Notes under the pieces: generated by a model | Seen by the model: only the letters and a program-made list of their open reading frames with translations | What the model was told of the DNA's origin: nothing | Databases searched by the model: none | Translations under genes and position numbers: made by a program | Shown here: positions 37,334 through 60,261 of the stretch, piece after piece | How the letters are laid out: every line of letters begins with the position of its first letter | How positions within the stretch are numbered: position 1 is the first letter of the stretch | From: Utricularia gibba | Lineage: Eukaryota > Plantae > Magnoliophyta | Length of the DNA stretch: 64,000 bases | NCBI GenBank assembly: GCA_002189035.1 | Contig: NEEC01000012.1 | Location: 1,860,001-1,924,000, forward strand | Direction: 5' to 3'

Positions 37334-37759
37334 AAATCTTTGCCGTGAGTTGATTGAGATGCCCGAAGCCCCGAGGTTCTCTCGGAATCCCTCCCCGCCA
37401 TGGCATATCCTGCTTCTTTTTGGTAAGGCGTGATGAATGATGACTTGGGGGACGTGTGCTGCCTGCCCTCTCCATTTTTGTGCAGCTGCATATTCATTTG
37501 TTCAAATTCATGGTGTTTTGTCTGAGTTCCTTTTCTTGTAATTACGAATCATATCAAAAGTATTTTTTTCTTCCATGGTTTACATTGCTATTGCCATCGT
37601 GAACTGCATATGCTAGATAAAGTCTTTTGGATTGTAAAAAGCAATGGGAATCTTACACTTGCTGCAACAGTGCGACAAATGAAAGAATGTGTTGGTGAGC
37701 TACATGGCTAAATGTGTGATCCAGATTAACAGGAAAGGGGATTTATTTGTCCCTCAGGC

Positions 37760-38883
37760 TCAGGAGAAGGGGGACGGCAAGGCTGTGCAGTTGAGGGCGG
37801 CGAGGGTGGGCTGGATGAGGCTCTGCTCGATGCGGACGGCGATCTCCTGTGTGAAGTGGATGCCATCCCAAAACATGTGGTGTGCGGGGTCCGAGCACAC
37901 GGGCACTCCTGCAGTCCCGCAGAACCTGTTGCTGCTGTAGTCGTACTCTCCTCCGATGCCGCAGCACGCCTTCAGGGCGGTGTCCGCGTGTCCCTCTGCA
38001 ACACACGCCATAACCAGTCAAAAATCGGAACCACGGGTGTATCTATGTATGCATGTGCGTACCTTGATTTAATCTGTCGAGGACCTGCAAGAAGCCCTCG
38101 TCGAAGGCTCCGTAGATGAGGGTGACGTTGGGGAACTCCTGCCCCAAACTGTTGATGCCTCGCCGGAGATAATTGTTCTTCAGGTTGATGAGTCTGTTGA
38201 CGCTGTTGAGGCATCCCAAACGGTCGTACGCCGCGGGATCATCGGAGGGCATGGCGGAGAGGATGTAGGGGAAGCAGCCGAGGGGAGCACTTGCGGGGAT
38301 GACGATGAGCCTGGCGCCCATGGTGATGAGCTCCTGCAAGGCAAGCGGGGTTGGTATCAGTATGCTCTGAAGAACATGGAGGAGAGCTGGACAGAAATGA
38401 ATTGGTTAGTTAGTTACCCTGGTGGCCTTGATTTGTTCTCTGGTGATGGGGCCGATGTAGGACTGCGCTTCCTGGAGGGTTCTCCCTTGCGTCAAGGCGT
38501 ATCCGATGTCATTTGCCTCGAGGTCCCCCAAGAGCACGAGCGAATTGGCCAGCCTGTTGGGGATGCAGTCGGCCGAGGATGAGCCGCACACCGACCGGAG
38601 GTGGGTTCTGAACCATTCGAGCTGGGTGGTGAGGGAAACTGCGTAGGGCGGGATCCGAATGCCCCGGCGAGAGAAGAACCCGTGGTCCATCACCGGACTC
38701 CTGGCGACCGAAAAGATGACGCCGTTGCTGGAATTGGACCTCTCCGACAGGTAAGGAACTATCTCCGGGAACCCGAAGTCAAAGGCGGCGAAGTCGAAAT
38801 CAACGAGGCCGTCGGACCATCGCCCGTTGGGCGTGCCGGGATAAGTCCGGCCGTAGGGGGCACGCGTGTCGGGCAATGATCTC
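37760..38883 (-). pseudogene. GDSL copy A: 5'-truncated acetylajmalan-esterase-like GDSL gene
   Basis: Nearly identical to copy C from gagatcattg (RSLPDTRAPYGRTYPG) through both introns to PSPFS* at 37760. The start codon, signal peptide and block I are replaced by copia LTR sequence at 38884. Confidence 0.9.
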
Positions 38884-39115
38884 TAAACAAGCAAATAAAG
38901 AATAGCTAGAGGAAGATGAGCGCAGTAAAATATTTCCGTAAAAAAAATCAGCTCTATGCATGAAAAAAAACAGCAGTCTACAAGGCTTATTTCAAGAAGA
39001 CTAAAAACCAGAACACACGCAAAGAACGTGGGTATATCACACGAAACCTCCTCTGCACGCTTTTCTGCACATCAGCAGGTTTAGCCCAGCTATTCCATAA
39101 TAACGTTCCTCTTTA
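38884..39115 (-). repeat. Putative 3' LTR of the copia element (~232 bp)
   Basis: Begins right after the PPT (TAAAG...) and ends where identity to the GDSL gene resumes (...GTTTA). There is no second LTR to confirm it. Confidence 0.55.
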
Positions 39116-42100: not shown

Positions 42101-43255
42101 CCAGAATCAATAATCCACTCCCATGGATTACATACAAAGCATGCAGATGCAGTGTTCATGACTCCTAACACCTGTGGAATCACCATGAAATTTATGATGA
42201 AGCAAGTCCCATGGGGAATGTGGAGAAACGAACAGGAAAGGTTCCTGGGAAACTGAAGAAAGGAAAGATGAAGGGCAACAGGCCGTGCTTGGATGTGAAG
42301 GAAGAAGCGGGCCACTCTTCAAAGGCCCATAAGGTGAACCACACCTACTGAGGCCCCATCCCAACCTGCCTACCCAACAATCAGCAACGGTTGCCTACTC
42401 TGGAGTTGAGGAATAGGCAACGGTCACAAAATCCGAACTCTATAAAAGATACACTCCGCTGTAGATCAAAAAGTAGGGTAATAACCCAAACTCCACAGAC
42501 ATCATTCCACAAATCTGTTCTTCTTTTCTACAACTCTTCAACACCATGGGTGACGTACCTGAGAATTCCAGTTTGGACAGATTGATTGATGGAGAAGATG
42601 ACATGTGACCTTCAGGGTTTTCCCTTGAGGTAGAAGGTGGAATGCTACCCATCAACTTTGTCAATTCTCGCTGAATGACCTGTAAACGATCAGTGGAGTA
42701 TGAGATATCAGAAGCGTATGAGAGAGACTCATCCAAAGGGGTCTCAACACAATGCACAGCAGGTCGATAAGAATTATAAGACACAGGCTGACGAGGTGCC
42801 AACGGCGCTTGTTGATACTGATTCCAAGGGGGGCGAGACTGCTCACAATGAGGTGATTGTGATTTCACATCTTGGGAACCATATTTACCCCCTTTTTTGC
42901 GCCACCAAGGGGGAGGTTCTTTGACCGTGAAGCAATTGTCAGATAGATGACCCTGCTTATTACAAATGGTACAGAACCTGTTATCACGACGCTATCCTGG
43001 TCCGGGATGTGTCCCAGGGTTGGGCTCTCGAATGGACTTAATCATCATGGCTGAGTTGGTGTGGATATTCACCACCTCAGGTGTCCTTCGACACATCTGT
43101 TGCTCAACATTCAAGAGGGCCCCATATGCCTTGGACACTATCATGAATTCATCCATGGCTAGTATCTGATTACGAATCCCATCAAATTTCGGGTGGAGAC
43201 CCAGCAGAAATTGAGTGAGCTTAGTTGATCCAAAGAATCTATCGGCATTTACTGG
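38884..43255 (-). mobile_element. Ty1/copia LTR retrotransposon (Ale/RE1-like), degenerate, truncated within gag, 3' LTR only
   Basis: Gag remnant KLTQFLLGL..IRNQIL; protease WIIDSGATTHI; integrase CDLWGPY/YFLTIVDDHTRTTW/QQNARVERKHRHLLEV; RT AIGCKWVYKIK/RFKARLVAKGYTQVEG/QIDVNNAFLHG/LIYVDDILLGG; RNase H ADVFTKAL; PPT gaggagggag. The frames are interrupted. Confidence 0.95.
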
Positions 43256-44000
43256 TATATTGCATTTGTGCCTTGGGATGAATTTCTCATCATAATGCAA
43301 GCAAAGGTTTTTGGCCTTTGGTTCTTCGAATTCCTTCCGTGGTAGCTGTTTTAGGGTCATTGATATGAGATTCTCCTTTTTTTGTAGTTTGGTTTTCTAT
43401 TTGGGTAGTCTCATTGTCCTGATGGTTTACATTCAAGTGTTCTTTTTCTCTATTTATGTTGATTTTGCCTACTCCTTTGAAGGTTCCGTTCTTGCTGTGT
43501 AGTAATAGCACCAAGCTCGTGGCATCTATAGTGTTGCAAGGATTCTAGAGTGTAACTTGATTCTTAAGGTCATCGGGTAATCCATTCAAGTATATGCGCA
43601 TTTTGTTCATGGGATCCAAGCTTTGAACTGTGACTGCCATTTCCCAGAAGCAATGGTTGTAGTGTTCTAAGCTTCCTATTATAGATAGCTTTGCGAAATG
43701 CATCATATTGGATGTCCAATTCTAAGAACCAAACTGTAGATTTCAAAATCTTTTGAACTCATGACATTTCAAACCGGGAGATTATTGCTCTGTAACCATA
43801 TAAACCAGTTTTGTGCTAAACCCTCTTGATACATTAGATCACACGGTGGTTGTTCTCATCATCTGTGCTATGATGTTTGAATGCATGCTCACATCTGTAA
43901 AGCCATCCTAAGGGGTCGGATTCACCATTATATTTGGGCACTTATTGACGTAATTGGTTGATTCTGGGTTTCCAGTAGTAAAATCTTTCCGATTGTATAA
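43255..44000 (-). mobile_element. Degenerate Ty3/gypsy gag-like remnant inside the left arm (mirror at 59170-59898)
   Basis: Broken frames include EFEEPKAKNLCLHYDEKFIPRHKC, a decayed gypsy gag knuckle-like (LC..CDEKF...HKC) segment. A more diverged third copy lies at about 53495-54110. Confidence 0.55.
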
Positions 44001-44137
44001 AGCAATGGGAAAACTTACACTTGCTGTAAGAGTGTGACAAATCAAAGAATGTGTTGTTAGCTAGCTACATGGGCAAATCTGTGCCATGGAGAAGGGATCC
44101 AGAAGAAGAGGAAAGGGGATTTATTTGTCCCTCAGGC

Positions 44138-45462
44138 TCAGGAGAAGGGGGACGGCAAGGCTGTGCAGTTGAGGGCGGCGAGAGTGGGCTGGATGAGGCT
44201 CTGCTCGATGCGGACGGCGATCTCCTGTGTGAAGTGGATGCCGTCCCAAAACATGTGGTGTGCGGGTTCCGAGCACACGGGCACTCCTGCAGTCCCGCAG
44301 AACCTGTTGCTGCTGTAGTCGTACTCTCCTCCGATGCCGCAGCACGCCTTCAGGGCGGTGTCCGCGTGTCCTTCTGCAACACACGCCATAACCAGTCAAA
44401 AATGGGAACGGCGGGTGTATCTATGAATGCATGTACGTACCTTGATTCAATCTGTCGAGGACCTGCAAGAAGCCCTCGTCGAAGGCTCCGTAGATGAGTG
44501 TGACGTTGGGGAACTCCTGCCCCAAATTGTCGATGGCTCGCCGGAGATAATTGTTCTTCAGGTTGATGAGCCTGTTGACGCTGTTGAGGCATCCCAAACG
44601 ATCGTACGCCGCGGGATCATCGGAGGGCATGGCGGAGAGGATGTAGGGGAAGCAGCCGAGGGGAGCGCTTGCGGGGATGACGATGAGCCTGGCGCCCATG
44701 GTGATGAGCTCCTGCAAGGCAAGCAGGGTTTGGTATCAGTATGATTTCAGGAGACTTCAACATAAATTGAAGGAGTGATGAATTAGTTAGTTACCCTGGT
44801 TGCCTTGATTTGTTCTCTGGTGATGGGGCCGATGTAGGACTGTGCTTCCTGGAGGGTCCTCCCTTGCGTCAAGGCGTATCCGATGTCATTTGCCTCGAGG
44901 TCCCCCAAGAGCACGAGCGAATTGGCCAGCCTGTTGGGGATGCAGTCGGCCGAGGATGAGCCGCACACCGACCGGAGGTGGGTTCTGAACCATTCGAGCT
45001 GGGTGGTGAGGGAAACTGCGTAGGGCGGGATCCGAATGCCCCGGCGAGAGAAGAACCCGTGGTCCATCACCGGACTCCTGGCGACCGAAAAGATTACGCC
45101 GTTGCTGGAATTGGACTTCTCCGACAGGTAAGGAACGATCTCCGGGAACCCGAAGTCAAAGGCGGCGAAGTCGAAATCAACGAGGCCGTCGGACCATCGC
45201 CCGTTGGGGGTGCCGGGATAAGTCCGGCCGTAGGGGGCACGCGTGGCTGGCAATGATCTCCCCATGGCTGGACAAGGACGGAGTTGCCGACGTCGGTGGC
45301 GCCGTCGCCGAAGTGGTAAAGGTAGGGAAACGGGCACACGGGGTTTGAAGGCAAGTGATTACTACTTCTGCTGCTGCTGCTGTTACCCGTCGTCTGGGAG
45401 GAAGCGAGAGCACAGGCACTGGCGAGTGCGACGAGCAGCAAGAGCCGAGAGAGGGAGCCCAT
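44138..45462 (-). CDS. GDSL copy B: secreted AAE-like GDSL/SGNH-fold protein lacking the catalytic Ser; 1-bp frameshift at about 45258-45263 (G4 vs G5), possibly a consensus error
   Basis: Signal peptide MGSLSRLLLLVALASACALA, YHFGDGATDVGN, GRWSDG, LGDLEANDI, ACCGIGG, WDGIHFT. The ORF splits at QPWG-DHC, where mirror copy E reads QPWGRSL. Confidence 0.88.
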
Positions 45463-45536
45463 GACGATGATGATGATGCTGTGTATGGGAATGCCGAATG
45501 ATGATGATGGGTCTCTGGTCGCAGAGAGCGCGCCTC

Positions 45537-45731
45537 TTTATAGGCTGCCGGAGAATGGAATTGGAGATGTCAAAGGCCATTTCACAGTTACGTGTTGATG
45601 AATTCAACATACGGCGTCGTGTGCTCCTCACGCGTACGGCTTCCATTCAAAGACCACCTAACCCCTGCACGCCACGTGCACTCAGTCCATATTAAATTTC
45701 TAATATTCTTATTTTACTGTATCTGACGTCA
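45537..45731 (-). promoter_or_regulatory. Proximal promoter of GDSL B (mirror 57422-57616 for E): TATA box, G-box CACGTG, palindromic TGACGTCA
   Basis: TATAAA 45537-45542 (minus strand) about 75 bp upstream of the ATG, CACGTG 45673-45678, TGACGTCA 45724-45731. Motif matches only. Confidence 0.5.
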
Positions 45732-47039
45732 CTACAAAATTAGTAAAAGATGAATAATGAACATCACCATTTTTCTCATGCATATATCTAATTTTTTATT
45801 TATTCATTAAATCATTTCGTGTAATAATTAGGAAATAAAAGTGGATGATGCCATGGCCATGTCATCCCAAATGGCAACCCTAGTGGTTGACGAGAATTCC
45901 CCATCCAGTCATGGGCGGCTAAATGGGCAATTCGCCCTTCTGCCCAGTGCTCCAGTTCTCCCCTAGGCCCACGTACTGTATCTGATCATTTATTGGGTTA
46001 TTTTAAATAATAACTATTTTAATTTATTTTAAATATGATTTTTCAAATTTTTTTTAATATTAATTATCACAGGATATCGTGGGATATTTATCAGATTTAA
46101 CATTGTATGTATTTTAAAGTTATCGCGTGTTTATTAAGTATGCTGTTGTACCCTATAAGATATTATGGTATAATATCTTTACAGAGTGTTATTAGATATC
46201 GTTGAATGCGATTGAACGAAATCGAATATAGTAAATTTTAAAATAATTTAGCTTAGAAAAATTGTAAATAAATATAAAAAATTGAAGCACATATAAATAT
46301 TTATTTTAAAAAATATTTTCAAACCTTAAAAATCAATTATTTTTGAAATACAGTTTTTAAAAATACATTTATATGTTTTGTAAACAATTTTTAAAATATA
46401 TATTTAATATTTTTATTAAGTGATAAAATCTTTTTTATTATTTTCTTATAAACATTATCTAATAATGAATATAAATATAAAATACTACATGATTTATATA
46501 AAAATGAAGTAAATGTATTTTGGTTATTTTTATCAATATATGCATATTTTTATTAATTTAACTCATATTTATTAATGTAAGATAGTTATTATTCAAACAA
46601 ATATTAAAAGATGGTGAAATTTGAAAATTTTGATGTTGTAGTATGATTATTCTTCAAAATAATCCATTGTTTATTTGATTTTCTACTGTACCATCATTTA
46701 TAATCATAAATAAATGCCATGATATTTGGAAGACTATAGCATTGAAGACCATAGTATTCATGAGCTTTTATAATATTTATAAAAGTATCTATTTTTAATT
46801 AAAAAAATTAGAAATAGAAATGTGAGACGATGGTTCCGATACAAAATGCTCAAAAGCAGATGCACGTTGTTTAGAAGGGGGGAAAAGACAGCGGTGAGAT
46901 TTGTATTTATTAATGTTTGAATCACTCATCGTATAAAATTCATACGCGGGCTGAAGACAAAGAAAAACACGACGAGAGGAGTAGAAAGTCAGCGGTCCAA
47001 TGAAAACGGAAAAGTTGACATTTTCCGTTCCCGGCAGCC

Positions 47040-47046
47040 TATAAAT
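47040..47046 (+). promoter_or_regulatory. TATA box of GDSL C (mirror 56107-56113 for D)
   Basis: cTATAAATag about 75 bp upstream of the ATG, in a ggcagcctataaa context shared with B/E. Confidence 0.6.
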
Positions 47047-47118
47047 AGGCGCGCTGTCTGCGACCAGAAACCATCATCATCATTCGGCATTCCCTTACAC
47101 AGCATCATCATCATCCTC

Positions 47119-48440
47119 ATGGGCTCTCTCTCTCGGCTCTTGCTGCTCGTGGCACTCGCCAGTGCCTTTGCTCTCGCTTCCTCCCAGACGACGGGTAACA
47201 GCAGCAGTAGTAGTAATCAATTGCCTGCAAACCCCGTGTGCCCGTTTCCCTATCTTTACCACTTCGGCGACGGCGCCACCGACGTCGGCAACTCCGTCCT
47301 TGTCCAGCCATGGGGGAGATCATTGCCCGCCACGCGTGCCCCCTACGGCCGGACTTATCCCGGCACCCCCAACGGGCGATGGTCCGACGGCCTCGTTGAT
47401 TTTGACTTCGCCGCCTTTGACTTCGGGTTCCCGGAGATCGTTCCTTACCTGTCGGAGAGGTCCAATTCCAGCAACGGCGTCATCTTTTCGGTCGCCAGGA
47501 GTCCGGTGATGGACCACGGGTTCTTCTCTCGCCGGGGCATTCGGATCCCGCCCTACGCAGTTTCCCTCACCACCCAGCTCGAATGGTTCAGAACCCACCT
47601 CCGGTCGGTGTGCGGCTCATCCTCGGCCGACTGCATCCCCAACAGGCTGGCCAATTCGCTCGTGCTCTTGGGGGACCTCGAGGCAAATGACATCGGATAC
47701 GCCTTGACGCAAGGGAGAACCCTCCAGGAAGCGCAGTCCTACATCGGCCCCATCACCAGAGAACAAATCAAGGCCACCAGGGTAACTAACTAACCAATTC
47801 ATTTCTGTCCAGCTCTCCTCCATGTTCTTCAGAGCATACTGATACCAACCCCCGCTTGCCTTGCAGGAGCTCATCACCATGGGCGCCAGGCTCATCGTCA
47901 TCCCCGCAAGTGCTCCCCTCGGCTGCTCCCCCTACATCCTCTCCGCCATGCCCTCCGATGATCCCGCGGCGTACGACCGTTTGGGATGCCTCAACAGCGT
48001 CAACAGACTCATCAACCTGAAGAACAATTATCTCCGGCGAGGCATCAACAGTTTGGGGCAGGAGTTCCCCAACGTCACCCTCATCTACGGAGCCTTCGAC
48101 GAGGGCTTCTTGCAGGTCCTCGACAGATTGAATCAAGGTACGTACATGCATACATAGATACACCCGCCGTTCCCATTTTTGACTGGTTATGGCGTGTGTT
48201 ACAGAGGGACACGCGGACACCGCCCTGAAGGCGTGCTGCGGCATCGGAGGAGAGTACGACTACAGCAGCAACAGGTTCTGCGGGACTGCAGGAGTGCCCG
48301 TGTGCTCGGACCCCGCACACCACATGTTTTGGGATGGCATCCACTTCACACAGGAGATCGCCGTCCGCATCGAGCAGAGCCTCATCCAGCCCACCCTCGC
48401 CGCCCTCAACTGCACAGCCTTGCCGTCCCCCTTCTCCTGA
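47119..48440 (+). CDS. GDSL copy C: intact ~389-aa secreted AAE-like GDSL/SGNH-fold protein lacking the catalytic Ser; exons 47119-47781, 47867-48137, 48205-48440
   Basis: GT-AG introns splice in frame to give CPFPYLYHFGDGATDVGN...PYGRTYPGTPNGRWSDG...QLEWFRTHLRSVCG...GDLEANDIGY...ATR|ELITMGAR...|EGHADTALKACCGIGGEYDY...CGTAGVPVCSDPAHHMFWDGIHFTQE. This is colinear with Rauvolfia acetylajmalan esterase as I recall it. Confidence 0.95.
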
Positions 48441-48606
48441 GTCTGAGGGACAAACAAATCCCCTTTCCTGTTCTCCTGGATCCCTTCCCCATTTGCCCCT
48501 GTAGCTAGCTAACAACACATTCTTTGATTTGTTCAGCGTTGACAGTAACCACAAATGCATTATCAGTTTCTTCGAAACGTGTCGTGTGTTATGCACCCGA
48601 TTCACA

Positions 48607-51600
48607 GAGATAATTACTTATCACACCAACGGTTAGATAGAGAATTCCAAGATGTAGCCAACTTTGTACTTAGTGCTTCATTTTATTTACACATCATCAT
48701 TTTTTATTTAATTTTTAATTCAATTAATATTTTATATTTATATTTTACACGAAAATTAAAAAAAATAATATATTATATTTATTTCTTTTTATATTATATT
48801 ATAATCAATTTGATCATCACAATAATACATATGTAACATTGATATTTTCAGATTTTAACATTAAAATTCTAAAAAATTTTAAAATTAAAAAACGAAGCAA
48901 TAGTACACATGTGATACTGACATGTTCAGATTTTAACATTAAAATTGTAAAAAAGTTTGGTGTAATATTAAATTCATTTGTTTTTTTTCCAATTCAAAAT
49001 TCAAAAACGAAGTATATAATGAAATACGCATCTCATATCATCATTCTTTCTCCTTTTCTTCCTCTTACAATTTCAATGGCTTCCTCTTGAATTGAGATCC
49101 AATTGTAATGGGGAGGTAACTTGTTTTATGGAAACAATGGTGTGTGCTATGATTCAGCACCACGATTTTCTGCTTCGATTATTCGAGATACCTCAATATC
49201 CATGCTGCTGTCGTTGATTTATGAAGTTATGCAACTATCTTCAAGTGAGTATTCTATTACCATCATTGTGAATTATGTTGCTATGGATTCAACAATGGGT
49301 TTTCAGAGGTACTGACATCCTCTTGATCAAACGGATGTTAGTTTGTCTTTGATTTTTAATCAAAGTCGTATAGTTTCAAGTGTTGATATGTATATTAGTG
49401 CAACTCCAAGCTTCATGAATTTGATCATTCAACAACACACTGGTATGTAATTTTTTTTTCCAAATAACATTTATTATTATTAGTTTTATATTATATTTAG
49501 GATATGTTTTTTGAATTCATATGATTAATTTGTGCTAATGATATATTTTATGTTTTATTTCTAGTTAATGTTGGAGAAGCATCAACCAATCATAATAATC
49601 CATGCACTTTACCAACATATCACAATTCTTCATCACCAGAATCACCTTGTGATGAAAACATATTATGGGATTTGGATCATTTATGTGAGAAAGATGGTAC
49701 TGAGCAAGCTGAAAACGAAATGATGCAAGAAGTTATTCCATCTCCACTTTCTTCAAGTGATGATGATGATGAACAAATAGAAGTCAGGTTTTATGAAAGC
49801 GATGTGGCAATGGAAATTCCAACAGCATTTGAGTTTGAGAAGACTTTAAACTTCTATGATGGGACAAACGGTGATCCATGCAAGGGGGTTTTCTTCAAAG
49901 ATAAAACTTCAATGAAGGAAGCATTGAATTATTATTGTATCACGAAGCTGAAAATGCCTTTTCATGTTGAGAAGAGCAATAACAAGCAGTATGAGATAAA
50001 CTGTATCAACCGAAATGCAACACCTCCATGTGAATGGCGTGTTAGAGTATGGAATAGCAGTGTCACTCAGTTTTGGACTGTGACACAATATGAGGGGCCT
50101 CATACTTGCTTTTCTAACAGTTCCAAAACTATTAGAAATGATAGCATTACTAGCAAATTTGTGTGTCTTCATATCATGAACAAGGTTAAAGCAAATCCAT
50201 GGATGTGTGTTTCTGATGTGATTGATGATATTAATGAAGTTTATCATTTCAAGATATCATATAAGCTTGGATGGACTGCTATTAGGCGTGATATTATGCA
50301 TATGTATGGTACTTGGGAGGAATCGAAGACAAAGCTCCCTTCTTATTTGTTATCTATTAAGGAATCTAACCCAAATAATTCATTTTTATTATTTTACAAA
50401 TATTGATGTTTGTTTACTAACATATTTGTTTTTATCACAGATACTATATTTGAATATGAGAATCTTCGTTCCCATGATGGCAAGCAAATGCTACACCATA
50501 TATTTTGGGCTTTTGGATCATGCGTGCATGGTTTTAGGTATTGTCGTCCAGTTATTACTGTTGATGGAACACATCTATATGCAGGATATAGATATCACCT
50601 TCTAATAGGATGCACACTTGATTGTGACCGTACTATAATTCCACTTGCATTTGCTATTGTTGAGGAAGAATCTTATGAATTCTGCTATTGGTTTTTTAAC
50701 CTTTTAGTTAAGCATATCGTGAAAGGACATCGTATTCGTCTAGTAACTGACCGTGGTGCAGGATTATTATCTGCAATTAAGGATATACCTGCTTTCAATG
50801 AGCCTATGGGAGATTACAGATTTTGTATGCAACATCTACTTGCAAATTTCATATCCCATTTCAGGTCGAAACATTTGGTTGATTTATTTTGGGAAGTTGC
50901 CTTAGGTTCAAAAAAGAAAAGTTTCAGATAGCTATGGAGAAAATCAGAAATAAGAATGAGGCAGCATTTGAGTATCTCCATGAAATCGATCCAAAGCGAT
51001 GAACATTATCATATGATGATGGCATTAGGTAACTTGAAATGGTATAATTTTATTAATATTATTACTATGTTAACCTTATATTTCTTTTTTTGTAGATGTG
51101 GTGTGCATACCACAAGTATCTCTGAATTATTAAACAGTGTTTTACGTGGGGCACAAAGATTACTTCCAAAAGCTCTTGTTGATGCCACTTTCGAGAGATG
51201 TGTTAAGATTTTCACAAATAGTAAAGGGGTCAATTGCTTACTCCATATTCACTATCTGTTTATAGGAAATGTGATGACAAATCAACCAACTACAGGATCA
51301 AGAAATACAATGCAGAGAAAATGAGTGACACTGTGATGTCTCTGAGTAAAAATTCTAGAAAAAACAAATATTATTATATTATTTATTTGACAGATTTGAC
51401 ATGTACTTGTGGAGAGTGGCAGCAAAAAGTTATTCCATGTTCACATGCCATTCAGGTAAGAATTATCTTTTGATATATCATGTGATTTGTAATATCATAA
51501 CAATTGTTAACTTTATTCCTCTCTTAGGTGTACAAGGAATTCAATGAAGATACAAGTTATTATATTTCAAAATATTATCAAGTGAAGATCCTTGCGAAAA

Positions 51601-52142
51601 TATACAAAAGACAATTTAATCCACCAATTCCTGAGAGTGGATGAGGTGCATCTCCATTTGATCTTGTTCACAATCCAGCAATAAGATTGAATATCAGAGG
51701 TTGTGCTAGATCAACACAATTTTCAAGTAGTTTAACTCATATACATTCGAAGAGAAGATCAAGATTTAATTAATTTTAATTTTAGATATTTTCGAGAATG
51801 CGTTTTCGAGACTTTGGGATTTTAATTTGAATAATATTGCTTATGCATTTATTAAATATTTTATTGCATAATTTTTGCATATATTTAATTATTATGTTTT
51901 AATTTATTGATTAATATAAATATTGTAATATAACTATATTGTAATATATTATATTTAAATTTTTCAATATAAAATATGATTAAATATATATTTTTTTTTA
52001 GAAAAGTATATATTTATATGATTTTTTGTACAAAAATAAATAATAAATAATGATGTGGAAATGAAATGTACCATTATAAGACAAAGTTGGCTACATATTG
52101 AAATTCTTTCTCCAATTGTTGATGTGATAAGGAATTTGCCCC
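48607..52142 (+). mobile_element. Mutator-like (MULE/MuDR) element, degenerate, with diverged TIRs and 9-bp TSD
   Basis: Transposase pieces FRYCRPVITVDGTHLYAGY...PLAFAIVEEE...VTDRGAGL...RFCMQHLLANF and SWIM-like CTCGEWQQKVIPCSHA, with stops. TIRs about 100 bp at 48607-48710 and 52035-52142 share ttatcaca and atgtagccaactttgt. TSD cgattcaca (48598-48606) / cgattgaca (52143-52151). Confidence 0.9.
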
Positions 52143-53099
52143 CGATTGACATATGTTGGATACGGGATATGAGTGATAAATATTAATAAGTACATTAAAA
52201 AATGAAAATTTAAAATTGAAATTCAATATTCCACATCTCATTTAATATTTTTTTATTTTTTTATTTATATTAAAAATAATAAAAAAGATAATTACCTTTT
52301 ATATAAATAAAATATTTATTATATTATTTGTAATTTATCAACAAAATTATATTTCATTCGATATATATGTGTATATATATAGATGTAACAACTCAATCAA
52401 GGCAACCTAAGGAACTGTACTATGAATAACATTAGCAACACAAACATATTCTACAAAAACCAATAACTTCGAAAATACATGTGATTGTTTACTCCAGATA
52501 CAACGGACCTCAATTATAATGCTTCTCTAGGTAGCCTTAGGCACGAGTTAGCACTTGAGTCACAAGTCAAATTTGATGAGTCAGGATAATAAAGATAACC
52601 CGTCCAGTCACGAGTCAAAAAGTTATACATTTGACTCGACTCTTATCATGAGTTATTTGGAGTCGAATATTTAAAATACAAACACTGTATTTAATCTATT
52701 TAGTACTTGTCATAATTTGTGAAAAAAATAACATCACAATTTATACAGTACCATTTGTTTTCCACTCAGTGTTTTTCCATAATTTAAAAAAATCAGTAGC
52801 ACTATCTAGAATCACATATACACTAAACCGATGCTTGTCATAACTTGTGAGATATAACAATATTATACAACGCAATATTTGTGTTTCTTAATGCTTATCA
52901 TATATATATATATTAAAAAAATACAAGTTGACTTGGATAAAAAAATATATGATTCAGTACGAGTCAACTCAAGAGTTACTCGAATTAACTCGTACTAGGT
53001 AGTAGTGCCCATATGTAAAAAAGATGGATAATAAATTTTGTGGAGCCCAAGATTGGACACTTGTCTCCTAGAACTATTTTGTGTTTTGTGTGCCTCGTG

Positions 53100-54110
53100 A
53101 TCTGAAGGCATAGCTTGAAGAAAGTACAAAGTCTCTTCTGTGATCAACACCACGGCAGCATTGGCGCTTGGAGACATTTCTAAGAATTTAATGGGTCCTG
53201 TTACTCGTTCTTGCACCATAAATACATCACATTTGGTATAGAGCAATCTTTCTGTACCTGTGAGATGGAAGAATTGAAGGAAATGATAAAAGCTCTTCAC
53301 ACCCAAATGGAACCATGCATGACTGCTTTAGAGCAGCAATTGGAGTCTCATCGTTGGGAACCATCTGTGGAGAGCTCCAAAACTTTACTTTTTGTTGTTG
53401 TTTTTCTTGCAGAATTGCTTGTGAGAGTTCATCCTATTTTGCTATCACCAATCATGTGGGAAAACAACTCGAAATGGAGAAACATGATGCCCCTTACTAC
53501 TAGCAACCCAGAATCAACCAATTACGTGTATAAGTGCCCAAATATAATGCTGAATCCGACCCCTTAGGATGGTTAACAGATGCGAGCATGCATTCAAACA
53601 TCATAGCACACATGATGAGAACATGCACCGTATGTTCTCAAGTAGCAAGAGGGTTTAGCCCAAAACTGGTTTATATGGTTACAGAGGAATAATATCCCGG
53701 TTTGAAATGTAATGAGTTCAAAAGATTTTGAAATCTACACTTTGGTTGGTTCTTAGAATTGGGCATCAGTATGATCCATTTCGCAAATCCATTTAAGATA
53801 GGAAGCTTAGAAGACTACAACCATTGCTTCTGGGAAATGGCAGTCACGGTTCAAAACTATAGATGCCAAGACCTTGGCACTGTTACTACACAGCAAGAAC
53901 TGAACCTTCAAAAGAGTACGTAAAAATCAACATAAAAAGAGAAAAAGAACACTTGACTGTAAACTATCAGGGCAATCAGACTACCCAAATTGAAAACCAA
54001 ACCACGAAAAAAGGAGAATCAAATACCTACCATGGAAGGAATTCGAAGAACCAAAGGCCAAAAACCTTTGCTTGCATTATGATGAGAAATTCATCCTGAG
54101 GCACAAATGC
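53100..54110 (+). mobile_element. Degenerate Ty3/gypsy gag-region remnant in the spacer
   Basis: Visibly homologous but not identical to 59185-59895, and extends further 5' with a decayed MEELKEMIKALHTQME... frame. Confidence 0.5.
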
Positions 54111-54454
54111 ATGAACCTATTTTTATTTTAGAATTCATTCACAATGAATTCCAAGATGATGGGGTATTCGAGGTGCATATGTTTTTTTCGATGAAAAAGG
54201 CCTATTTCGATCAAGTAAACTTTTAGCACATGAATCAATTAATCAACCAGTTAACCGATGTAAACCAATTGATTCCCAGAACACTTCTGCTTCATCAAGA
54301 AAACAGCACATAAAAATCTTTCAGTCAACACATACTAATGCTTTCCATATTTATTTCAGAGAACTGAAACCATAAAAAGCCAGCATACTAATGCTTTCGT
54401 GGTTCATCGCAACAAATTGTTAACTTGACTTGGCGAAAAAATGGCAACCGCAGC

Positions 54455-54525
54455 TTAATTCTTGCCAGCAAGATCCTCTAAGGTAATATTCAAAGAATCA
54501 GCAGACACCTTCTTGACTGTCTCAC
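54455..54525 (-). pseudogene. Duplicated 3' tail of the DNL zinc-finger gene
   Basis: Encodes ETVKKVSADSLNITLEDLAGKN*, nearly identical to the end of the gene at 60262-60330. Its 3' flank (to about 54110) also matches 59900-60260. Confidence 0.85.
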
Positions 54526-54712
54526 CCATATCCCGTATCCAACATATGTGAATCGGGTGCATAACACACGACACGTTTCGAAGAAACTGATAATGCATTT
54601 GTGGTTACTGTCAACGCTGAACAAATCAAAGAATGTGTTGTTAGCTAGCTACAGGGGCAAATGGGGAAGGGATCCAGGAGAACAGGAAAGGGGATTTGTT
54701 TGTCCCTCAGAC

Positions 54713-56034
54713 TCAGGAGAAGGGGGACGGCAAGGCTGTGCAGTTGAGGGCGGCGAGGGTGGGCTGGATGAGGCTCTGCTCGATGCGGACGGCGATCTCC
54801 TGTGTGAAGTGGATGCCATCCCAAAACATGTGGTGTGCGGGGTCCGAGCACACGGGCACTCCTGCAGTCCCGCAGAACCTGTTGCTGCTGTAGTCGTACT
54901 CTCCTCCGATGCCGCAGCACGCCTTCAGGGCGGTGTCCGCGTGTCCCTCTGTAACACACGCCATAACCAGTCAAAAATGGGAACGGCGGGTGTATCTATG
55001 TATGCATGTACGTACCTTGATTCAATCTGTCGAGGACCTGCAAGAAGCCCTCGTCGAAGGCTCCGTAGATGAGGGTGACGTTGGGGAACTCCTGCCCCAA
55101 ACTGTTGATGCCTCGCCGGAGATAATTGTTCTTCAGGTTGATGAGTCTGTTGACGCTGTTGAGGCATCCCAAACGGTCGTACGCCGCGGGATCATCGGAG
55201 GGCATGGCGGAGAGGATGTAGGGGGAGCAGCCGAGGGGAGCACTTGCGGGGATGACGATGAGCCTGGCGCCCATGGTGATGAGCTCCTGCAAGGCAAGCG
55301 GGGGTTGGTATCAGTATGCTCTGAAGAACATGGAGGAGAGCTGGACAGAAATGAATTGGTTAGTTAGTTACCCTGGTGGCCTTGATTTGTTCTCTGGTGA
55401 TGGGGCCGATGTAGGACTGCGCTTCCTGGAGGGTTCTCCCTTGCGTCAAGGCGTATCCGATGTCATTTGCCTCGAGGTCCCCCAAGAGCACGAGCGAATT
55501 GGCCAGCCTGTTGGGGATGCAGTCGGCCGAGGATGAGCCGCACACCGACCGGAGGTGGGTTCTGAACCATTCGAGCTGGGTGGTGAGGGAAACTGCGTAG
55601 GGCGGGATCCGAATGCCCCGGCGAGAGAAGAACCCGTGGTCCATCACCGGACTCCTGGCGACCGAAAAGATGACGCCGTTGCTGGAATTGGACCTCTCCG
55701 ACAGGTAAGGAACGATCTCCGGGAACCCGAAGTCAAAGGCGGCGAAGTCAAAATCAACGAGGCCGTCGGACCATCGCCCGTTGGGGGTGCCGGGATAAGT
55801 CCGGCCGTAGGGGGCACGCGTGGCGGGCAATGATCTCCCCCATGGCTGGACAAGGACGGAGTTGCCGACGTCGGTGGCGCCGTCGCCGAAGTGGTAAAGA
55901 TAGGGAAACGGGCACACGGGGTTTGCAGGCAATTGATTACTACTACTGCTGCTGTTACCCGTCGTCTGGGAGGAAGCGAGAGCAAAGGCACTGGCGAGTG
56001 CCACGAGCAGCAAGAGCCGAGAGAGAGAGCCCAT
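54713..56034 (-). CDS. GDSL copy D: intact mirror of copy C
   Basis: ORF-track translations are identical to copy C (224-aa and 98-aa pieces and the last-exon piece), including GDG. Confidence 0.95.
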
Positions 56035-57690
56035 GAGGATGATGATGATGCTGTGTAAGGGAATGCCGAATGATGATGATGGTTTCTGGTCGCAGACAGC
56101 GCGCCTATTTATAGGCTGCCGGGAACGGAAAATGTCAACTTTTCCGTTTTCATTGGACCGCTGACTTTCTACTCCTCTCGTCGTGTTTTTCTTTGTCTTC
56201 AGCCCGCGTATGAATTTTATACGATGAGTGATTCAAACATTAATAAATACAAATCTCACCGCTGTCTTTTCCCCCCTTCTAAACAACGTGCATCTGCTTT
56301 TGAGCATTTTGTATCGGAACCATCGTCTCACATTTCTATTTCTAATTTTTTTAATTAAAAATAGATACTTTTATAAATATTATAAAAGCTCATGAATACT
56401 ATGGTCTTCAATGCTATAGTCTTCCAAATATCATGGCATTTATTTATGATTATAAATGATGGTACAGTAGAAAATCAAATAAACAATGGATTATTTTGAA
56501 GAATAATCATACTACAACATCAAAATTTTCAAATTTCACCATCTTTTAATATTTGTTTGAATAATAACTATCTTACATTAATAAATATGAGTTAAATTAA
56601 TAAAAATATGCATATATTGATAAAAATAACCAAAATACATTTACTTCATTTTTATATAAATCATGTAGTATTTTATATTTATATTCATTATTAGATAATG
56701 TTTATAAGAAAATAATAAAAAAGATTTTATCACTTAATAAAAATATTAAATATATATTTTAAAAATTGTTTACAAAACATATAAATGTATTTTTAAAAAC
56801 TGTATTTCAAAAATAATTGATTTTTAAGGTTTGAAAATATTTTTTAAAATAAATATTTATATGTGCTTCAATTTTTTATATTTATTTACAATTTTTCTAA
56901 GCTAAATTATTTTAAAATTTACTATATTCGATTTCGTTCAATCGCATTCAACGATATCTAATAACACTCTGTAAAGATATTATACCATAATATCTTATAG
57001 GGTACAACAGCATACTTAATAAACACGCGATAACTTTAAAATACATACAATGTTAAATCTGATAAATATCCCACGATATCCTGTGATAATTAATATTAAA
57101 AAAAATTTGAAAAATCATATTTAAAATAAATTAAAATAGTTATTATTTAAAATAACCCAATAAATGATCAGATACAGTACGTGGGCCTAGGGGAGAACTG
57201 GAGCACTGGGCAGAAGGGCGAATTGCCCATTTAGCCGCCCATGACTGGATGGGGAATTCTCGTCAACCACTAGGGTTGCCATTTGGGATGACATGGCCAT
57301 GGCATCATCCACTTTTATTTCCTAATTATTACACGAAATGATTTAATGAATAAATAAAAAATTAGATATATGCATGAGAAAAATGGTGATGTTCATTATT
57401 CATCTTTTACTAATTTTGTAGTGACGTCAGATACAGTAAAATAAGAATATTAGAAATTTAATATGGACTGAGTGCACGTGGCGTGCAGGGGTTAGGTGGT
57501 CTTTGAATGGAAGCCGTACGCGTGAGGAGCACACGACGCCGTATGTTGAATTCATCAACACGTAACTGTGAAATGGCCTTTGACATCTCCAATTCCATTC
57601 TCCGGCAGCCTATAAAGAGGCGCGCTCTCTGCGACCAGAGACCCATCATCATCATTCGGCATTCCCATACACAGCATCATCATCATCGTC

Positions 57691-59088
57691 ATGGGCTCCC
57701 TCTCTCGGCTCTTGCTGCTCGTCGCACTCGCCAGTGCCTGTGCTCTCGCTTCCTCCCAGACGACGGGTAACAGCAGCAGCAGCAGAAGTAGTAATCACTT
57801 GCCTTCAAACCCCGTGTGCCCGTTTCCCTACCTTTACCACTTCGGCGACGGCGCCACCGACGTCGGCAACTCCGTCCTTGTCCAGCCATGGGGGAGATCA
57901 TTGCCAGCCACGCGTGCCCCCTACGGCCGGACTTATCCCGGCACCCCCAACGGGCGATGGTCCGACGGCCTCGTTGATTTCGACTTCGCCGCCTTTGACT
58001 TCGGGTTCCCGGAGATCGTTCCTTACCTGTCGGAGAAGTCCAATTCCAGCAACGGCGTAATCTTTTCGGTCGCCAGGAGTCCGGTGATGGACCACGGGTT
58101 CTTCTCTCGCCGGGGCATTCGGATCCCGCCCTACGCAGTTTCCCTCACCACCCAGCTCGAATGGTTCAGAACCCACCTCCGGTCGGTGTGCGGCTCATCC
58201 TCGGCCGACTGCATCCCCAACAGGCTGGCCAATTCGCTCGTGCTCTTGGGGGACCTCGAGGCAAATGACATCGGATACGCCTTGACGCAAGGGAGGACCC
58301 TCCAGGAAGCACAGTCCTACATCGGCCCCATCACCAGAGAACAAATCAAGGCAACCAGGGTAACTAACTAATTCATCACTCCTTCAATTTATGTTGAAGT
58401 CTCCTGAAATCATACTGATACCAAACCCTGCTTGCCTTGCAGGAGCTCATCACCATGGGCGCCAGGCTCATCGTCATCCCCGCAAGCGCTCCCCTCGGCT
58501 GCTTCCCCTACATCCTCTCCGCCATGCCCTCCGATGATCCCGCGGCGTACGATCGTTTGGGATGCCTCAACAGCGTCAACAGGCTCATCAACCTGAAGAA
58601 CAATTATCTCCGGCGAGCCATCGACAATTTGGGGCAGGAGTTCCCCAACGTCACACTCATCTACGGAGCCTTCGACGAGGGCTTCTTGCAGGTCCTCGAC
58701 AGATTGAATCAAGGTACGTACATGCATTCATAGATACACCCGCCGTTCCCATTTTTGACTGGTTATGGCGTGTGTTGCAGAAGGACACGCGGACACCGCC
58801 CTGAAGGCGTGCTGCGGCATCGGAGGAGAGTACGACTACAGCAGCAACAGGTTCTGCGGGACTGCAGGAGTGCCCGTGTGCTCGGAACCCGCACACCACA
58901 TGTTTTGGGACGGCATCCACTTCACACAGGAGATCGCCGTCCGCATCGAGCAGAGCCTCATCCAGCCCACTCTCGCCGCCCTCAACTGCACAGCCTTGCC
59001 GTCCCCTTCTCCTGAGCCTGAGGGACAAATAAATCCCCTTTCCTCTTCTTCTGGATCCCTTCTCCATGGCACAGATTTGCCCATGTAG
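57691..59088 (+). CDS. GDSL copy E: mirror of copy B, exon 1 intact; C4 vs C5 at about 59003-59006 removes the normal stop and extends the C-terminus (possibly a consensus error)
   Basis: 226-aa first-exon ORF with YHFGDGATDVGN. The last exon ends PSPSPEPEGQINPLSSSSGSLLHGTDLPM* instead of PSPFS*. Confidence 0.9.
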
Positions 59089-60261
59089 CTAGCTAACAAC
59101 ACATTCTTTGATTTGTCACACTCTTACAGCAAGTGTAAGTTTTCCCATTGCTTTATACAATCGGAAAGATTTTACTACTGGAAACCCAGAATCAACCAAT
59201 TACGTCAATAAGTGCCCAAATATAATGGTGAATCCGACCCCTTAGGATGGCTTTACAGATGTGAGCATGCATTCAAACATCATAGCACAGATGATGAGAA
59301 CAACCACCGTGTGATCTAATGTATCAAGAGGGTTTAGCACAAAACTGGTTTATATGGTTACAGAGCAATAATCTCCCGGTTTGAAATGTCATGAGTTCAA
59401 AAGATTTTGAAATCTACAGTTTGGTTCTTAGAATTGGACATCCAATATGATGCATTTCGCAAAGCTATCTATAATAGGAAGCTTAGAACACTACAACCAT
59501 TGCTTCTGGGAAATGGCAGTCACAGTTCAAAGCTTGGATCCCATGAACAAAATGCGCATATACTTGAATGGATTACCCGATGACCTTAAGAATCAAGTTA
59601 CACTCTAGAATCCTTGCAACACTATAGATGCCACGAGCTTGGTGCTATTACTACACAGCAAGAACGGAACCTTCAAAGGAGTAGGCAAAATCAACATAAA
59701 TAGAGAAAAAGAACACTTGAATGTAAACCATCAGGACAATGAGACTACCCAAATAGAAAACCAAACTACAAAAAAAGGAGAATCTCATATCAATGACCCT
59801 AAAACAGCTACCACGGAAGGAATTCGAAGAACCAAAGGCCAAAAACCTTTGCTTGCATTATGATGAGAAATTCATCCCAAGGCACAAATGCAAGATACTA
59901 TTTTTTTCAGAATTCATTGACAATGAATTCCAAGGCGATAGGGAGGCCGAGGGGCATTTGTTTTTCAATGAAAAAGGCCTATTTCGATCAAGTAAACCGT
60001 TAACACATAAATCAATTAATCAAACCAGTTAACCGATGTAAACCAATCGATTCCAAGAACACTTCTGCTTCAACAAGAAAACAGCACATACAAATCTTAC
60101 AGTCAACACATACTAATGCTTTCCATATTTATTTCAGAGAACTGAAACCAAGAAAAAAAAAAGCCAGCATTTGACTGCAGGATCAAGAAAGCCTTATCTC
60201 ATGCTCGTCGTTCATTGCAAGAAACTGTTAACGTGGCTCGGCCAAAAATGGCCACCACAGC

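What the first reader, a model, noticed from the sequence alone, without database searches (positions are those of the whole stretch)
44138..59088. Amplified secreted GDSL proteins that have lost the catalytic serine (candidate pseudo-enzyme or repurposed SGNH system)
Seen: B, C, D and E read YHFGDGATDVGN (Gly52 in C, codon GGC at 47272). All five copies read GVIFSVARS (Arg127, 47497) where this clade has GVNFAVAGA. Block III Asn (EAND, 47686) and block V DGIH (48333-48344) are kept, as are the Cys residues, several N-x-S/T sequons and, where the 5' end survives, the signal peptide. C and D are uninterrupted ~389-aa ORFs. Established: SGNH hydrolases need the block I Ser nucleophile and the block II Gly of the oxyanion hole; Arabidopsis MVP1/GOLD36 is a precedent for a Ser-less GDSL that works through protein binding; the AAE clade acts in specialised metabolism. 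Inference: two of the four SGNH residues are gone, yet the gene is intact and amplified. That suggests selection for dosage of a non-hydrolytic secreted protein: a ligand or lipid binder, a scaffold or decoy, or a His/Asp general-base catalyst with new chemistry.
Basis: partly seen in the sequence, partly recalled or inferred. Interest (0 to 1): 0.88.

Follow-up and report, generated by a model that had tools for sequence, protein, structure and literature searches.

The report
Serine-less GDSL protein family of Lamiales
These genes encode secreted lipase-like proteins that lost the catalytic serine long ago, belong to a conserved, much-duplicated subfamily found across the mint order (Lamiales), and are still expressed, so they probably do something other than ordinary ester hydrolysis.

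Summary
Every motif and coordinate checks out. RNA contigs confirm a three-exon, 389-aa gene.

The 'five copies' are only two distinct full-length sequences. B/E and C/D are 98% identical as protein and sit head to head. A 5,352-bp palindrome (99.94% identical arms) doubles them. Copy A is 5'-truncated but transcribed.

The main new result is that Ser-to-Gly is not private to this genome. Every close relative in the databases lacks the serine: 71 proteins from eight core-Lamiales families. They form one clade (support 100/100) on a long stem. Its sister is a canonical Ser-bearing Lamiales clade, and both nest among acetylajmalan-esterase-type GDSLs.

The clade retains Asn190 and Asp355-x-x-His358. 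It has also fixed new residues next to the old centre: His48, Ile122, Arg127 and Glu188. dN/dS is 0.12-0.29.

So this is an old, selected, neofunctionalised subfamily. I favour serine-independent catalysis (about 0.5) over a non-catalytic binder or companion (about 0.35). Neither is tested.

'Selection for dosage' is not supported: a recent inverted duplication or gene conversion explains the local copy number. I found no paper describing the clade.

Other first-stage notes of this scan flag similar GDSL palindromes and a Ser-to-Gly GDSL elsewhere in this genome. I did not check them.

The parts
37614..38883 (-). Copy A: 5'-truncated GDSL copy. It lacks the signal peptide and block I, is 97.5% identical to C, and its exon 3 is identical to C's.
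   Evidence: It is transcribed: a 677-nt RNA contig in run X1 carries A's private SNPs and A's own upstream sequence (38884-38913).
44138..45462 (-). Copy B (exons 44795-45462, 44441-44711, 44138-44373). It is the mirror of E, with a 1-nt homopolymer deletion (C4 at 45259) that shifts exon 1.
47119..48440 (+). Copy C: an intact 389-aa gene (exons 47119-47781, 47867-48137, 48205-48440). A TATA-like box lies at about 47041-47050.
   Evidence: Both introns are confirmed by spliced RNA contigs.
54713..56034 (-). Copy D: exons 55372-56034, 55016-55286, 54713-54948. Its coding sequence is identical to C's.
   Evidence: exact reverse-complement matches of all three exons
57691..59088 (+). Copy E (exons 57691-58359, 58443-58713, 58781 onward). 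It is intact through residue 388. A G4 run at 59007 then shifts the last residues and moves the stop to 59088.
43255..48606 (.). Left arm of the palindrome (holds B and C)
   Evidence: 5,352 bp with 3 differences from the right arm. No bridging contig was seen at either junction of this arm in independent DNA contigs.
54547..59898 (.). Right arm of the palindrome (holds D and E)
   Evidence: A DNA contig in X11 runs from the arm's inner end into the right side of the spacer. A contig in X15 runs from the arm's outer end into the right flank.
48607..54546 (.). 5.9-kb spacer with a degraded MULE transposase (49672-51473, +)
   Evidence: PF03108, PF10551

Best explanation
The locus encodes members of an old, core-Lamiales-wide subfamily of acetylajmalan-esterase-type GDSL/SGNH-fold proteins that go through the secretory pathway.

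Shown:
- A duplication within Lamiales gave one lineage that retained the canonical Ser.
- The other lineage replaced the Ser with Gly on a long stem branch.
- That second lineage also remodelled the residues around the former nucleophile and oxyanion hole: His48, Ile122, Ser124, Arg127, Glu188.
- It retained Asn190 and the Asp355-x-x-His358 dyad, expanded to many copies per genome, and has stayed under purifying selection.
- In this genome, two 98%-identical paralogs sit head to head. An inverted duplication doubles them, and the arms are kept, or only recently became, nearly identical.
- At least the C/D type and the truncated copy A are transcribed.

Inferred mechanism: the proteins cannot form the classical acyl-serine intermediate. 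I think they most likely still act on small-molecule esters in the apoplast or vacuole by a serine-independent route. In that route the retained His/Asp dyad acts as a general base on an acceptor hydroxyl (or water), and the new Arg/Glu/His residues bind or polarise the substrate.

The identity part of this statement is about 0.9 likely. The mechanism part is about 0.5; the confidence given for this explanation is that of the mechanism.
For: Clade:
- All close relatives carry G, A or D, never S, at the nucleophile position: 67 G, 3 A, 1 D.
- The group is one clade at 100/100 with a stem of 0.40. Its sister is a Ser-bearing Lamiales clade with a stem of 0.09. Both sit inside the AAE group.
- An exhaustive HMMER scan of 1.84 billion representatives listed 140 new ones. 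Of these, 98 have a recognisable block I with Ser. Non-Ser cases were only Lamiales-type clusters plus two sporadic ones.

Constraint:
- dN/dS is 0.16 (C vs E), 0.285 (Castilleja pair) and 0.124 (Castilleja vs Paulownia).
- Nearly invariant inside the clade: G50, D51, D55, G57, N58, N190, D191, D355, G356, H358 and 8 Cys.
- No reversion to Ser was seen, although GGC to AGC is a single transition.

Remodelling near the old centre, fixed in the clade and absent from the Ser group: H48 in 64/71, hydrophobic residue at 122 in 71/72, R127 in 53/70, E188 in 64/70.

Fold: an AlphaFold model of the Castilleja relative P0006 (pLDDT 75.6) is SGNH. Its best reviewed matches are AAE (42-44% identity, TM 0.83-0.85).

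Expression and gene model: spliced RNA contigs in four runs from three studies.

Precedent for serine-independent GDSL transfer: mutating the triad of SlCGT costs no more than 40% of its activity (review PMC13415971).
Against: - No assay, ligand, partner or tissue information exists for any member.
- Retained His/Asp does not prove catalysis. MVP1/GOLD36 is also a Ser-to-Gly GDSL. It is described as a pseudoenzyme lacking lipase activity, and it works through protein complexes (PMC4757993, PMC3498303).
- The structure model is of a relative, not the window protein. Its confidence is low over residues 44-106, which include the loop after block I. No coordinates were available, so I could not measure how close Arg127, Glu188 and His48 lie to His358.
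- Arg127 is Gly in the earliest-branching Sesamum group and in several later groups, so it cannot be essential to whatever the clade's founding function was.
- The very high GC3 of the window genes (0.80) suggests biased gene conversion, which can distort dN/dS.
Confidence: 0.5

Rival explanations
1. Non-catalytic protein (true pseudoenzyme). It acts as a secreted or vacuolar binder, decoy or 'companion' that regulates another protein. Candidate partners are a beta-glucosidase complex, as for MVP1/GOLD36, or the canonical Ser-bearing sister GDSL, as the non-catalytic CsSCPL5 does for CsSCPL4.
For: - It carries the same Ser-to-Gly change as MVP1/GOLD36, which lacks lipase activity and co-purifies with PYK10/TGG2 complexes.
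- Every Lamiales species sampled also keeps canonical Ser-bearing sister paralogs that could be partners.
- Non-catalytic companion paralogs are documented for SCPL acyltransferases.
- Two of the four SGNH signature residues are gone, and an Arg plus a Glu now sit where the oxyanion hole was, which could simply plug the site.
Against: - His358, Asp355 and Asn190 remain nearly invariant in about 70 proteins across eight families. A pure scaffold does not obviously need that.
- Large tandem expansions are more typical of specialised-metabolism enzymes, although defence binders expand as well.
- No partner is known.
Confidence: 0.35
2. Still an ordinary esterase or lipase that uses another nucleophile, for example a migrated Ser such as the clade-specific Ser124, or Thr54.
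For: Ser124 replaces Ala in 54 of 72 clade members, and Thr/Ser54 lies two residues after Gly52. The literature discusses migrated catalytic residues in nominal pseudoenzymes (abstract of PMC10211241).
Against: - Ser124 is Ala in Penstemon and Sesamum members.
- Thr/Ser at position 54 is also present in canonical enzymes, so it is not a replacement.
- Position 124 lies within the block II stretch, three residues before the oxyanion position. From general knowledge of the SGNH fold it is unlikely to reach the dyad. This was not measured.
Confidence: 0.07
3. Decaying or functionless copies: the locus is a young pile-up of pseudogenes.
For: - B has a frameshift in exon 1 and E a shifted C-terminus.
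- A is truncated.
- TEs (copia, MULE) surround the copies.
Against: - C and D are intact, spliced and expressed.
- Both frameshifts are single-base homopolymer changes, and for E's the available short-read contig shows the intact version.
- dN/dS is 0.16 within the locus and 0.12-0.29 between relatives.
- The clade is conserved across eight families.
Confidence: 0.03
4. This rival concerns copy number only. The left arm of the palindrome (B and C) is an assembly artefact or is specific to the sequenced individual, so the true locus holds one head-to-head pair plus copy A.
For: - The arms differ only by one edge substitution and two homopolymer lengths, which is the typical pattern of long-read consensus error.
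- In independent DNA runs, a contig runs straight through the arm's inner end into the right side of the spacer, and another runs through the outer end into the right flank. Neither stops at a branch.
- No contig was seen bridging either left-arm junction.
Against: - The window contains no N runs.
- The flanks of the two arms are unrelated, so the arms are not two haplotypes laid side by side.
- The spacer is 5.9 kb of distinct sequence.
- Coverage in those DNA runs is low, they may come from other accessions, and contigs show presence rather than absence.
- Other first-stage notes report further GDSL palindromes in this genome (unchecked).
Confidence: 0.3

Closest known systems
MVP1/GOLD36/ERMO3 (Arabidopsis At1g54030)
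   Same: It is a GDSL-family protein of the secretory pathway with the same Ser-to-Gly replacement in block I. It is described as lacking lipase activity and as a pseudoenzyme, and it acts through protein complexes (PMC4757993, PMC3498303).
   Different: - Independent origin: the Lamiales clade's sister and all outgroups carry Ser, so the loss happened inside Lamiales.
- MVP1 is not among the 30 best reviewed structural matches.
- The Lamiales clade is order-wide and multi-copy. It also changed block II (Gly to Arg, Asn to Ile) and block III (Gly to Glu).
- Its function and partners are unknown.
Acetylajmalan esterase (AAE, Rauvolfia serpentina) and the At5g03980 / At1g28570-670 group
   Same: It is the nearest characterised relative: 42-45% identity and TM 0.83-0.85 to the model, with a shared pattern of conserved Cys. 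The clade nests inside this group in the tree.
   Different: AAE has the full SGNH set (GDS, GVNFAVAGA, GNND, DGxH) and is a hydrolase. The window proteins lack the nucleophile and the block II Gly.
SlCGT (tomato chlorogenate:glucarate caffeoyltransferase), a GDSL acyltransferase
   Same: It is an apoplastic GDSL-like protein that has lost hydrolase activity. Its transferase activity largely survives mutation of Ser, Asp or His, so it is a precedent for serine-independent GDSL chemistry (PMC13415971).
   Different: SlCGT still has the triad in its sequence.
CsSCPL5-type non-catalytic companion paralogs of SCPL acyltransferases
   Same: It is a catalytically dead paralog retained next to active paralogs and required for their maturation or activity (PMC13415971).
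   Different: It belongs to a different fold family (serine carboxypeptidase-like). The comparison is an analogy only.

Membership tests
SGNH/GDSL hydrolase superfamily | SGNH (flavodoxin-like alpha/beta/alpha) fold | tested here: met
   The AF2 model of clade member P0006 matches bacterial and fungal GDSL structures (E about 1e-10; TM by target 0.67-0.73 for the top 25 matches) and plant GDSL models (TM about 0.8). The model is of a relative, not the window protein.
SGNH/GDSL hydrolase superfamily | Pfam PF00657 match above threshold | tested here: inconclusive
Of the exons tested separately, only exon 2 hits PF00657, at 20.6 bits against a cut-off of 23.6. Full-length relatives carry precomputed PF00657.
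SGNH/GDSL hydrolase superfamily | Block I nucleophile Ser (GDS) | tested here: not met
   Gly52 (GGC at 47272). Across the clade the position is G 67, A 3, D 1, S 0.
SGNH/GDSL hydrolase superfamily | Block II oxyanion Gly (GxNFAxxG) | tested here: not met
   Arg127 (AGG at 47497). Across the clade the position is R 53, G 16. The Asn of the same block is Ile/Met/Val in 71 of 72. Assigning this Gly to the oxyanion hole rests on analogy with E. coli TAP, from my own knowledge.
SGNH/GDSL hydrolase superfamily | Block III Asn (GxND) | tested here: met
   Asn190-Asp191 are retained (69/72 and 70/72). The preceding Gly is Glu188 in 64/70.
SGNH/GDSL hydrolase superfamily | Block V Asp-x-x-His | tested here: met
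   D355-G-I-H358 at 48333-48344. Across the clade, D is 66/69 and H is 66/69.
AAE-type GDSL subfamily (OG-GELP-C4g in PMC9602515) | Phylogenetic placement with Rauvolfia AAE and its asterid relatives | tested here: met
   In the careful ML tree, the clade plus its Ser-bearing Lamiales sister (97/80) groups with Ipomoea. The AAE+Coffea pair joins next, at 99/97.
AAE-type GDSL subfamily (OG-GELP-C4g in PMC9602515) | Ester hydrolase activity | not testable with these tools
   Needs an enzyme assay. The loss of the nucleophile argues against the classical mechanism.
GDSL pseudoenzymes of the MVP1/GOLD36 kind | Ser-to-Gly at the nucleophile with the rest of the fold retained | tested here: met
   The MVP1 change is documented in PMC4757993.
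GDSL pseudoenzymes of the MVP1/GOLD36 kind | No esterase activity; function through protein-protein interaction | not testable with these tools
   No biochemical data exist for any member of the Lamiales clade (literature searches).
GDSL pseudoenzymes of the MVP1/GOLD36 kind | Common descent with MVP1 | tested here: not met
   The Ser loss maps to a branch inside Lamiales, with Ser-bearing sister and outgroups. This is therefore an independent loss. The MVP1 sequence itself was not in the tree.

The most novel reading that the evidence does not exclude
The clade is a new catalytic class on the SGNH fold. It would be a serine-independent enzyme whose centre was rebuilt from the old Asp-His dyad plus clade-specific His48, Arg127 and Glu188. 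It would carry out an acyl-transfer, lyase or isomerase step in a specialised-metabolite pathway typical of Lamiales, such as iridoid or phenylethanoid esters.
Probability: 0.3. Interest if true: 0.8.

Novelty: new variant of a known kind. Interest (0 to 1): 0.55.

Why it matters
GDSL proteins without the nucleophile have so far been treated as rare one-off 'dead enzymes'. One survey counted 3 of 116 in Arabidopsis and said it did not expect many (PMC4757993).

This case is different. A serine-less lineage has been retained, multiplied and conserved across at least eight Lamiales families, with a rebuilt set of residues at the old active site. Databases label all of its members 'acetylajmalan esterase' or 'GDSL esterase/lipase'.

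Two consequences follow:
- Annotation is misleading for dozens of genes per Lamiales genome.
- There is a defined, testable candidate family for missing steps or regulators in Lamiales specialised metabolism or defence. A natural control is available: the Ser-bearing sister paralog present in each species sampled here.

Tried and rejected
- The full-length window protein could not be given to tools by reference because of its introns. I used exon references and database relatives instead. Pfam on single exons gave only one sub-threshold hit.
- A profile search of PDB sequences found only remote bacterial GDSL enzymes and no plant structure.
- The ESM Atlas look-up returned generic GDSL clusters only.
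- Synteny with the Castilleja and Paulownia loci: nothing outside the GDSL genes matches.
- Search for LTRs or direct repeats around copy A: none.
- The sequence into which the left flank continues in runs X10/X11 (after 43264) is not in the window. I read those contigs as another copy of a repeat or another allele, which is not informative.
- dS between the window genes and their relatives is saturated (the NG86 estimate fails) because of the GC3 shift, so no cross-species dN/dS exists for the window genes themselves.
- Horizontal transfer from a GC-rich donor was considered as an explanation for the GC3 of 0.80. I rejected it because the genes nest inside the Lamiales clade.
- Six completed literature searches (serine loss, Orobanchaceae, MVP1, haustorium, pseudoenzyme, iridoid/phenylethanoid) found no description of this clade. 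One search failed on a formatting limit.
- The organism's family could not be fixed. The window genes sit on a long branch near Paulownia, Orobanchaceae and Andrographis sequences.


Full report
WHAT IS THERE

The window is plant DNA: genes with GT..AG introns, plus copia and MULE elements. Five GDSL-type copies lie between 37.6 and 59.1 kb.

A self-comparison and an arm alignment show that 43255-48606 is the reverse complement of 54547-59898. Over 5,352 bp the arms differ by one substitution at the edge and two homopolymer-length changes. B (minus strand) therefore mirrors E, and C (plus strand) mirrors D. D's three exons are exact reverse complements of C's.

B/E and C/D differ by 5.2% as DNA. 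They sit head to head with 1.66 kb between their start codons. Copy A (37614-38883, minus strand) is 97.5% identical to C but begins just after block I, next to a copia element.

GENE MODEL AND EXPRESSION

C reads as exon 1 47119-47781, exon 2 47867-48137 and exon 3 48205-48440, giving 389 aa. Spliced RNA contigs carry the two introns (85 and 67 nt, both GT..AG): intron 1 in three runs and intron 2 in four, out of four runs from three studies.

Several RNA contigs match C/D with no or one mismatch. One 677-nt contig carries copy A's private differences and A's own upstream sequence, so the truncated copy is transcribed too. Other RNA and DNA contigs show mixed combinations of the C-type and E-type differences. 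These point to further alleles or paralogs, or to conversion mosaics.

CHECK OF THE OBSERVATION

- The protein has ten Cys and four sequons.
- Its N-terminus looks like a signal peptide by eye.
- B carries a one-base deletion in a C run in exon 1.
- E carries a one-base deletion in a G run just before the stop.
- For E's site, the only short-read contig that covers it shows the intact version.

THE KEY RESULT: AN OLD CLADE, NOT A LOCAL ODDITY

A search with exon 1 returned about 50 relatives from Lamiales, at 40-69% identity. Wherever the motifs could be read, they are FGDG..D.GN (two Salvia proteins have GDA, one Castilleja protein GDD) and mostly GVIFSVARS. Two more searches, with a full-length relative and with a profile of divergent members, added Sesamum, Erythranthe, Penstemon and Andrographis proteins of the same kind. 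Beyond them they found only Ser-bearing proteins, including Rauvolfia AAE itself.

An exhaustive HMMER pass over 1.84 billion representatives listed 140 new sequences. Of these, 98 have a recognisable block I with Ser. The non-Ser cases were only the Lamiales clusters and two sporadic sequences.

In a careful maximum-likelihood tree:
- The serine-less proteins form one clade (100/100) on a stem of 0.40 substitutions per site.
- The clade's sister is a Ser-bearing, Lamiales-only clade (100/94, stem 0.09), joined at 97/80.
- Ipomoea joins next, and then the AAE+Coffea pair.

The families represented are Orobanchaceae, Paulowniaceae, Phrymaceae, Lamiaceae, Scrophulariaceae, Plantaginaceae (Penstemon), Acanthaceae and Pedaliaceae. 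I saw no Oleaceae or Gesneriaceae member, but the searches do not prove absence. Most species contribute several copies, and some are adjacent on one contig by their locus tags.

SELECTION AND WHAT CHANGED

dN/dS values:
- 0.16 between C and E (9 non-synonymous, 17 synonymous differences).
- 0.285 between the two adjacent Castilleja genes.
- 0.124 between Castilleja and Paulownia.

Nearly invariant within the clade are G50, D51, D55, G57 and N58 (block I frame), N190 and D191 (block III), D355, G356, H358 and T360 (block V), and eight Cys.

Fixed in the clade and different from every Ser-bearing relative:
- Gly52 (67 G, 3 A, 1 D, no S).
- His48 (64/71, against Gln/Asn).
- A hydrophobic residue at 122 (71/72, against Asn).
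- Ser124 (54/72, against Ala).
- Arg127 (53/70, against Gly).
- Glu188 (64/70, against Gly).

Arg127 is Gly in the earliest-branching Sesamum pair and in some Salvia, Striga, Andrographis and Buddleja members. The Ser loss therefore came first, and the Arg is not indispensable. A long stem followed by tight conservation, with changes concentrated around the old centre, is the pattern expected for a change of function rather than decay.

FOLD

An AlphaFold model of the Castilleja relative P0006, built from a 28-sequence alignment, has mean pLDDT 75.6. Confidence is low over residues 44-106. The model is an SGNH fold. Its best reviewed matches are the three Rauvolfia AAE entries (42-44% identity, TM 0.83-0.85), followed by At5g03980 and the At1g28570-670 group. 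No coordinates were available, so the geometry of the new residues is not known.

HOW IT MOST LIKELY WORKS

Shown: the classical acyl-serine mechanism is impossible. The rest of the catalytic frame is conserved, new charged or polar residues sit beside it, and the proteins carry the marks of the secretory pathway.

Inferred: I favour a serine-independent reaction in which His358/Asp355 activate an acceptor hydroxyl or water that attacks a bound ester directly (about 0.5). The precedent is SlCGT, a GDSL acyltransferase with no hydrolase activity whose activity falls by no more than 40% when Ser, Asp or His is mutated (PMC13415971).

The main rival is a non-catalytic binder or companion (about 0.35). 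MVP1/GOLD36 has the same Ser-to-Gly change, lacks lipase activity and associates with beta-glucosidase complexes (PMC4757993, PMC3498303). Non-catalytic SCPL companions are also known. An ordinary esterase using a migrated nucleophile (about 0.07) and functionless decay (about 0.03) are unlikely.

COPY NUMBER

Arms that are 99.94% identical fit a very recent inverted duplication or ongoing arm-to-arm conversion.

In independent short-read assemblies, contigs leave the arm into the right side of the spacer and into the right outer flank. I saw none bridging the left arm's two junctions. Coverage is low and the accessions may differ. The arm flanks are unrelated and the window has no gaps. I put about 0.7 on a real palindrome.

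A head-to-head pair with about 1.65 kb between starts also exists in Castilleja. In both species the two partners are each other's closest relatives. That pattern fits either independent duplications or concerted evolution of an old inverted pair.

AN UNEXPLAINED SIDE OBSERVATION

The window's GDSL coding sequence has GC3 of 0.80 (exons 0.77-0.86). The Castilleja and Paulownia relatives have 0.32, and the neighbouring SNF2 and DNL genes in the same window have 0.33-0.40. The introns (0.46-0.47) are also richer in GC than the flanks (0.25-0.30). The window genes sit on a long branch (0.4-0.5).

GC-biased gene conversion in a long-lived inverted repeat would explain all three facts. This is inference, and it means the dN/dS values should be read with care.

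COMPARISON WITH WHAT IS KNOWN, AND NOVELTY

By descent the proteins belong to the AAE-type GDSL group. By signature they fail two of the four SGNH residues. They resemble MVP1/GOLD36 in the key substitution but arose independently.

Six literature searches found no description of this clade. A 2026 review of GDSL acyltransferases states that all characterised ones possess the catalytic triad. I rate this a new variant of a known kind: an order-wide, expanded, remodelled serine-less GDSL lineage.

Other first-stage notes of this scan mention further GDSL palindromes and a 'triplicated' Ser-to-Gly/Gly-to-Arg GDSL on other pieces of this genome. I did not check them.

Noticed in passing
47119-48440 (and the other GDSL copies) compared with 20383-22301 and 60265-60534: GC3 of the GDSL coding sequence is 0.80. 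The Castilleja and Paulownia relatives have 0.32, and the neighbouring SNF2 and DNL genes have 0.33-0.40. Introns (0.46-0.47) are also GC-richer than the flanks (0.25-0.30). This may be GC-biased gene conversion within the inverted repeats, and it may explain the long branch of the window genes.
   Followed up: partly
L001:6917-11675 (Castilleja foliolosa): Two serine-less GDSL genes (P0008 on the minus strand, P0006 on the plus strand) sit head to head with about 1.65 kb between their starts, the same layout and spacing as B/C here. In each species the two partners are each other's closest relatives. This fits concerted evolution of an old inverted pair or independent duplications. The flanking genes are not syntenic with the window.
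   Followed up: partly
37614-38913: The truncated copy A is transcribed from its own upstream sequence: a 677-nt RNA contig in run X1 extends 210 nt beyond the break. A copia element (RT at 39438-39920, integrase at 40642-42315, minus strand) lies directly upstream.
   Followed up: partly
47328, 47403, 47459, 47481: RNA and DNA contigs from public runs carry combinations of the C-type and E-type bases that match neither copy in the window. They may be extra alleles or paralogs, or conversion mosaics.
   Followed up: no
53494-54528, 59172-60334 and 43261-43981: A repeat of about 1 kb (84-89% identity) lies beside the 3' ends of D, E and B. It carries short ORFs that look like retrotransposon gag remnants, and it marks the outer edge of the palindrome arms.
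   Followed up: no
P0067 (database protein): A 402-aa member of the plant serine-less clade is filed under Acinetobacter baumannii as 'SGNH/GDSL hydrolase family protein, partial', on a 1.6-kb contig. This is almost certainly plant DNA contaminating a bacterial assembly.
   Followed up: no
P0242 (Salvia splendens, 691 aa): An annotated protein holds two serine-less GDSL units (GDA and GDG) plus an acid-phosphatase domain (PF03767). It is probably a gene-model fusion of tandem neighbours.
   Followed up: no
15036-15680, 19409-23620, 60262-60534: Other genes in the window are a RING-finger ORF (GC3 0.67), a SNF2-family helicase in several exons, and a DNL-type zinc-finger exon directly right of the palindrome.
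   Followed up: partly
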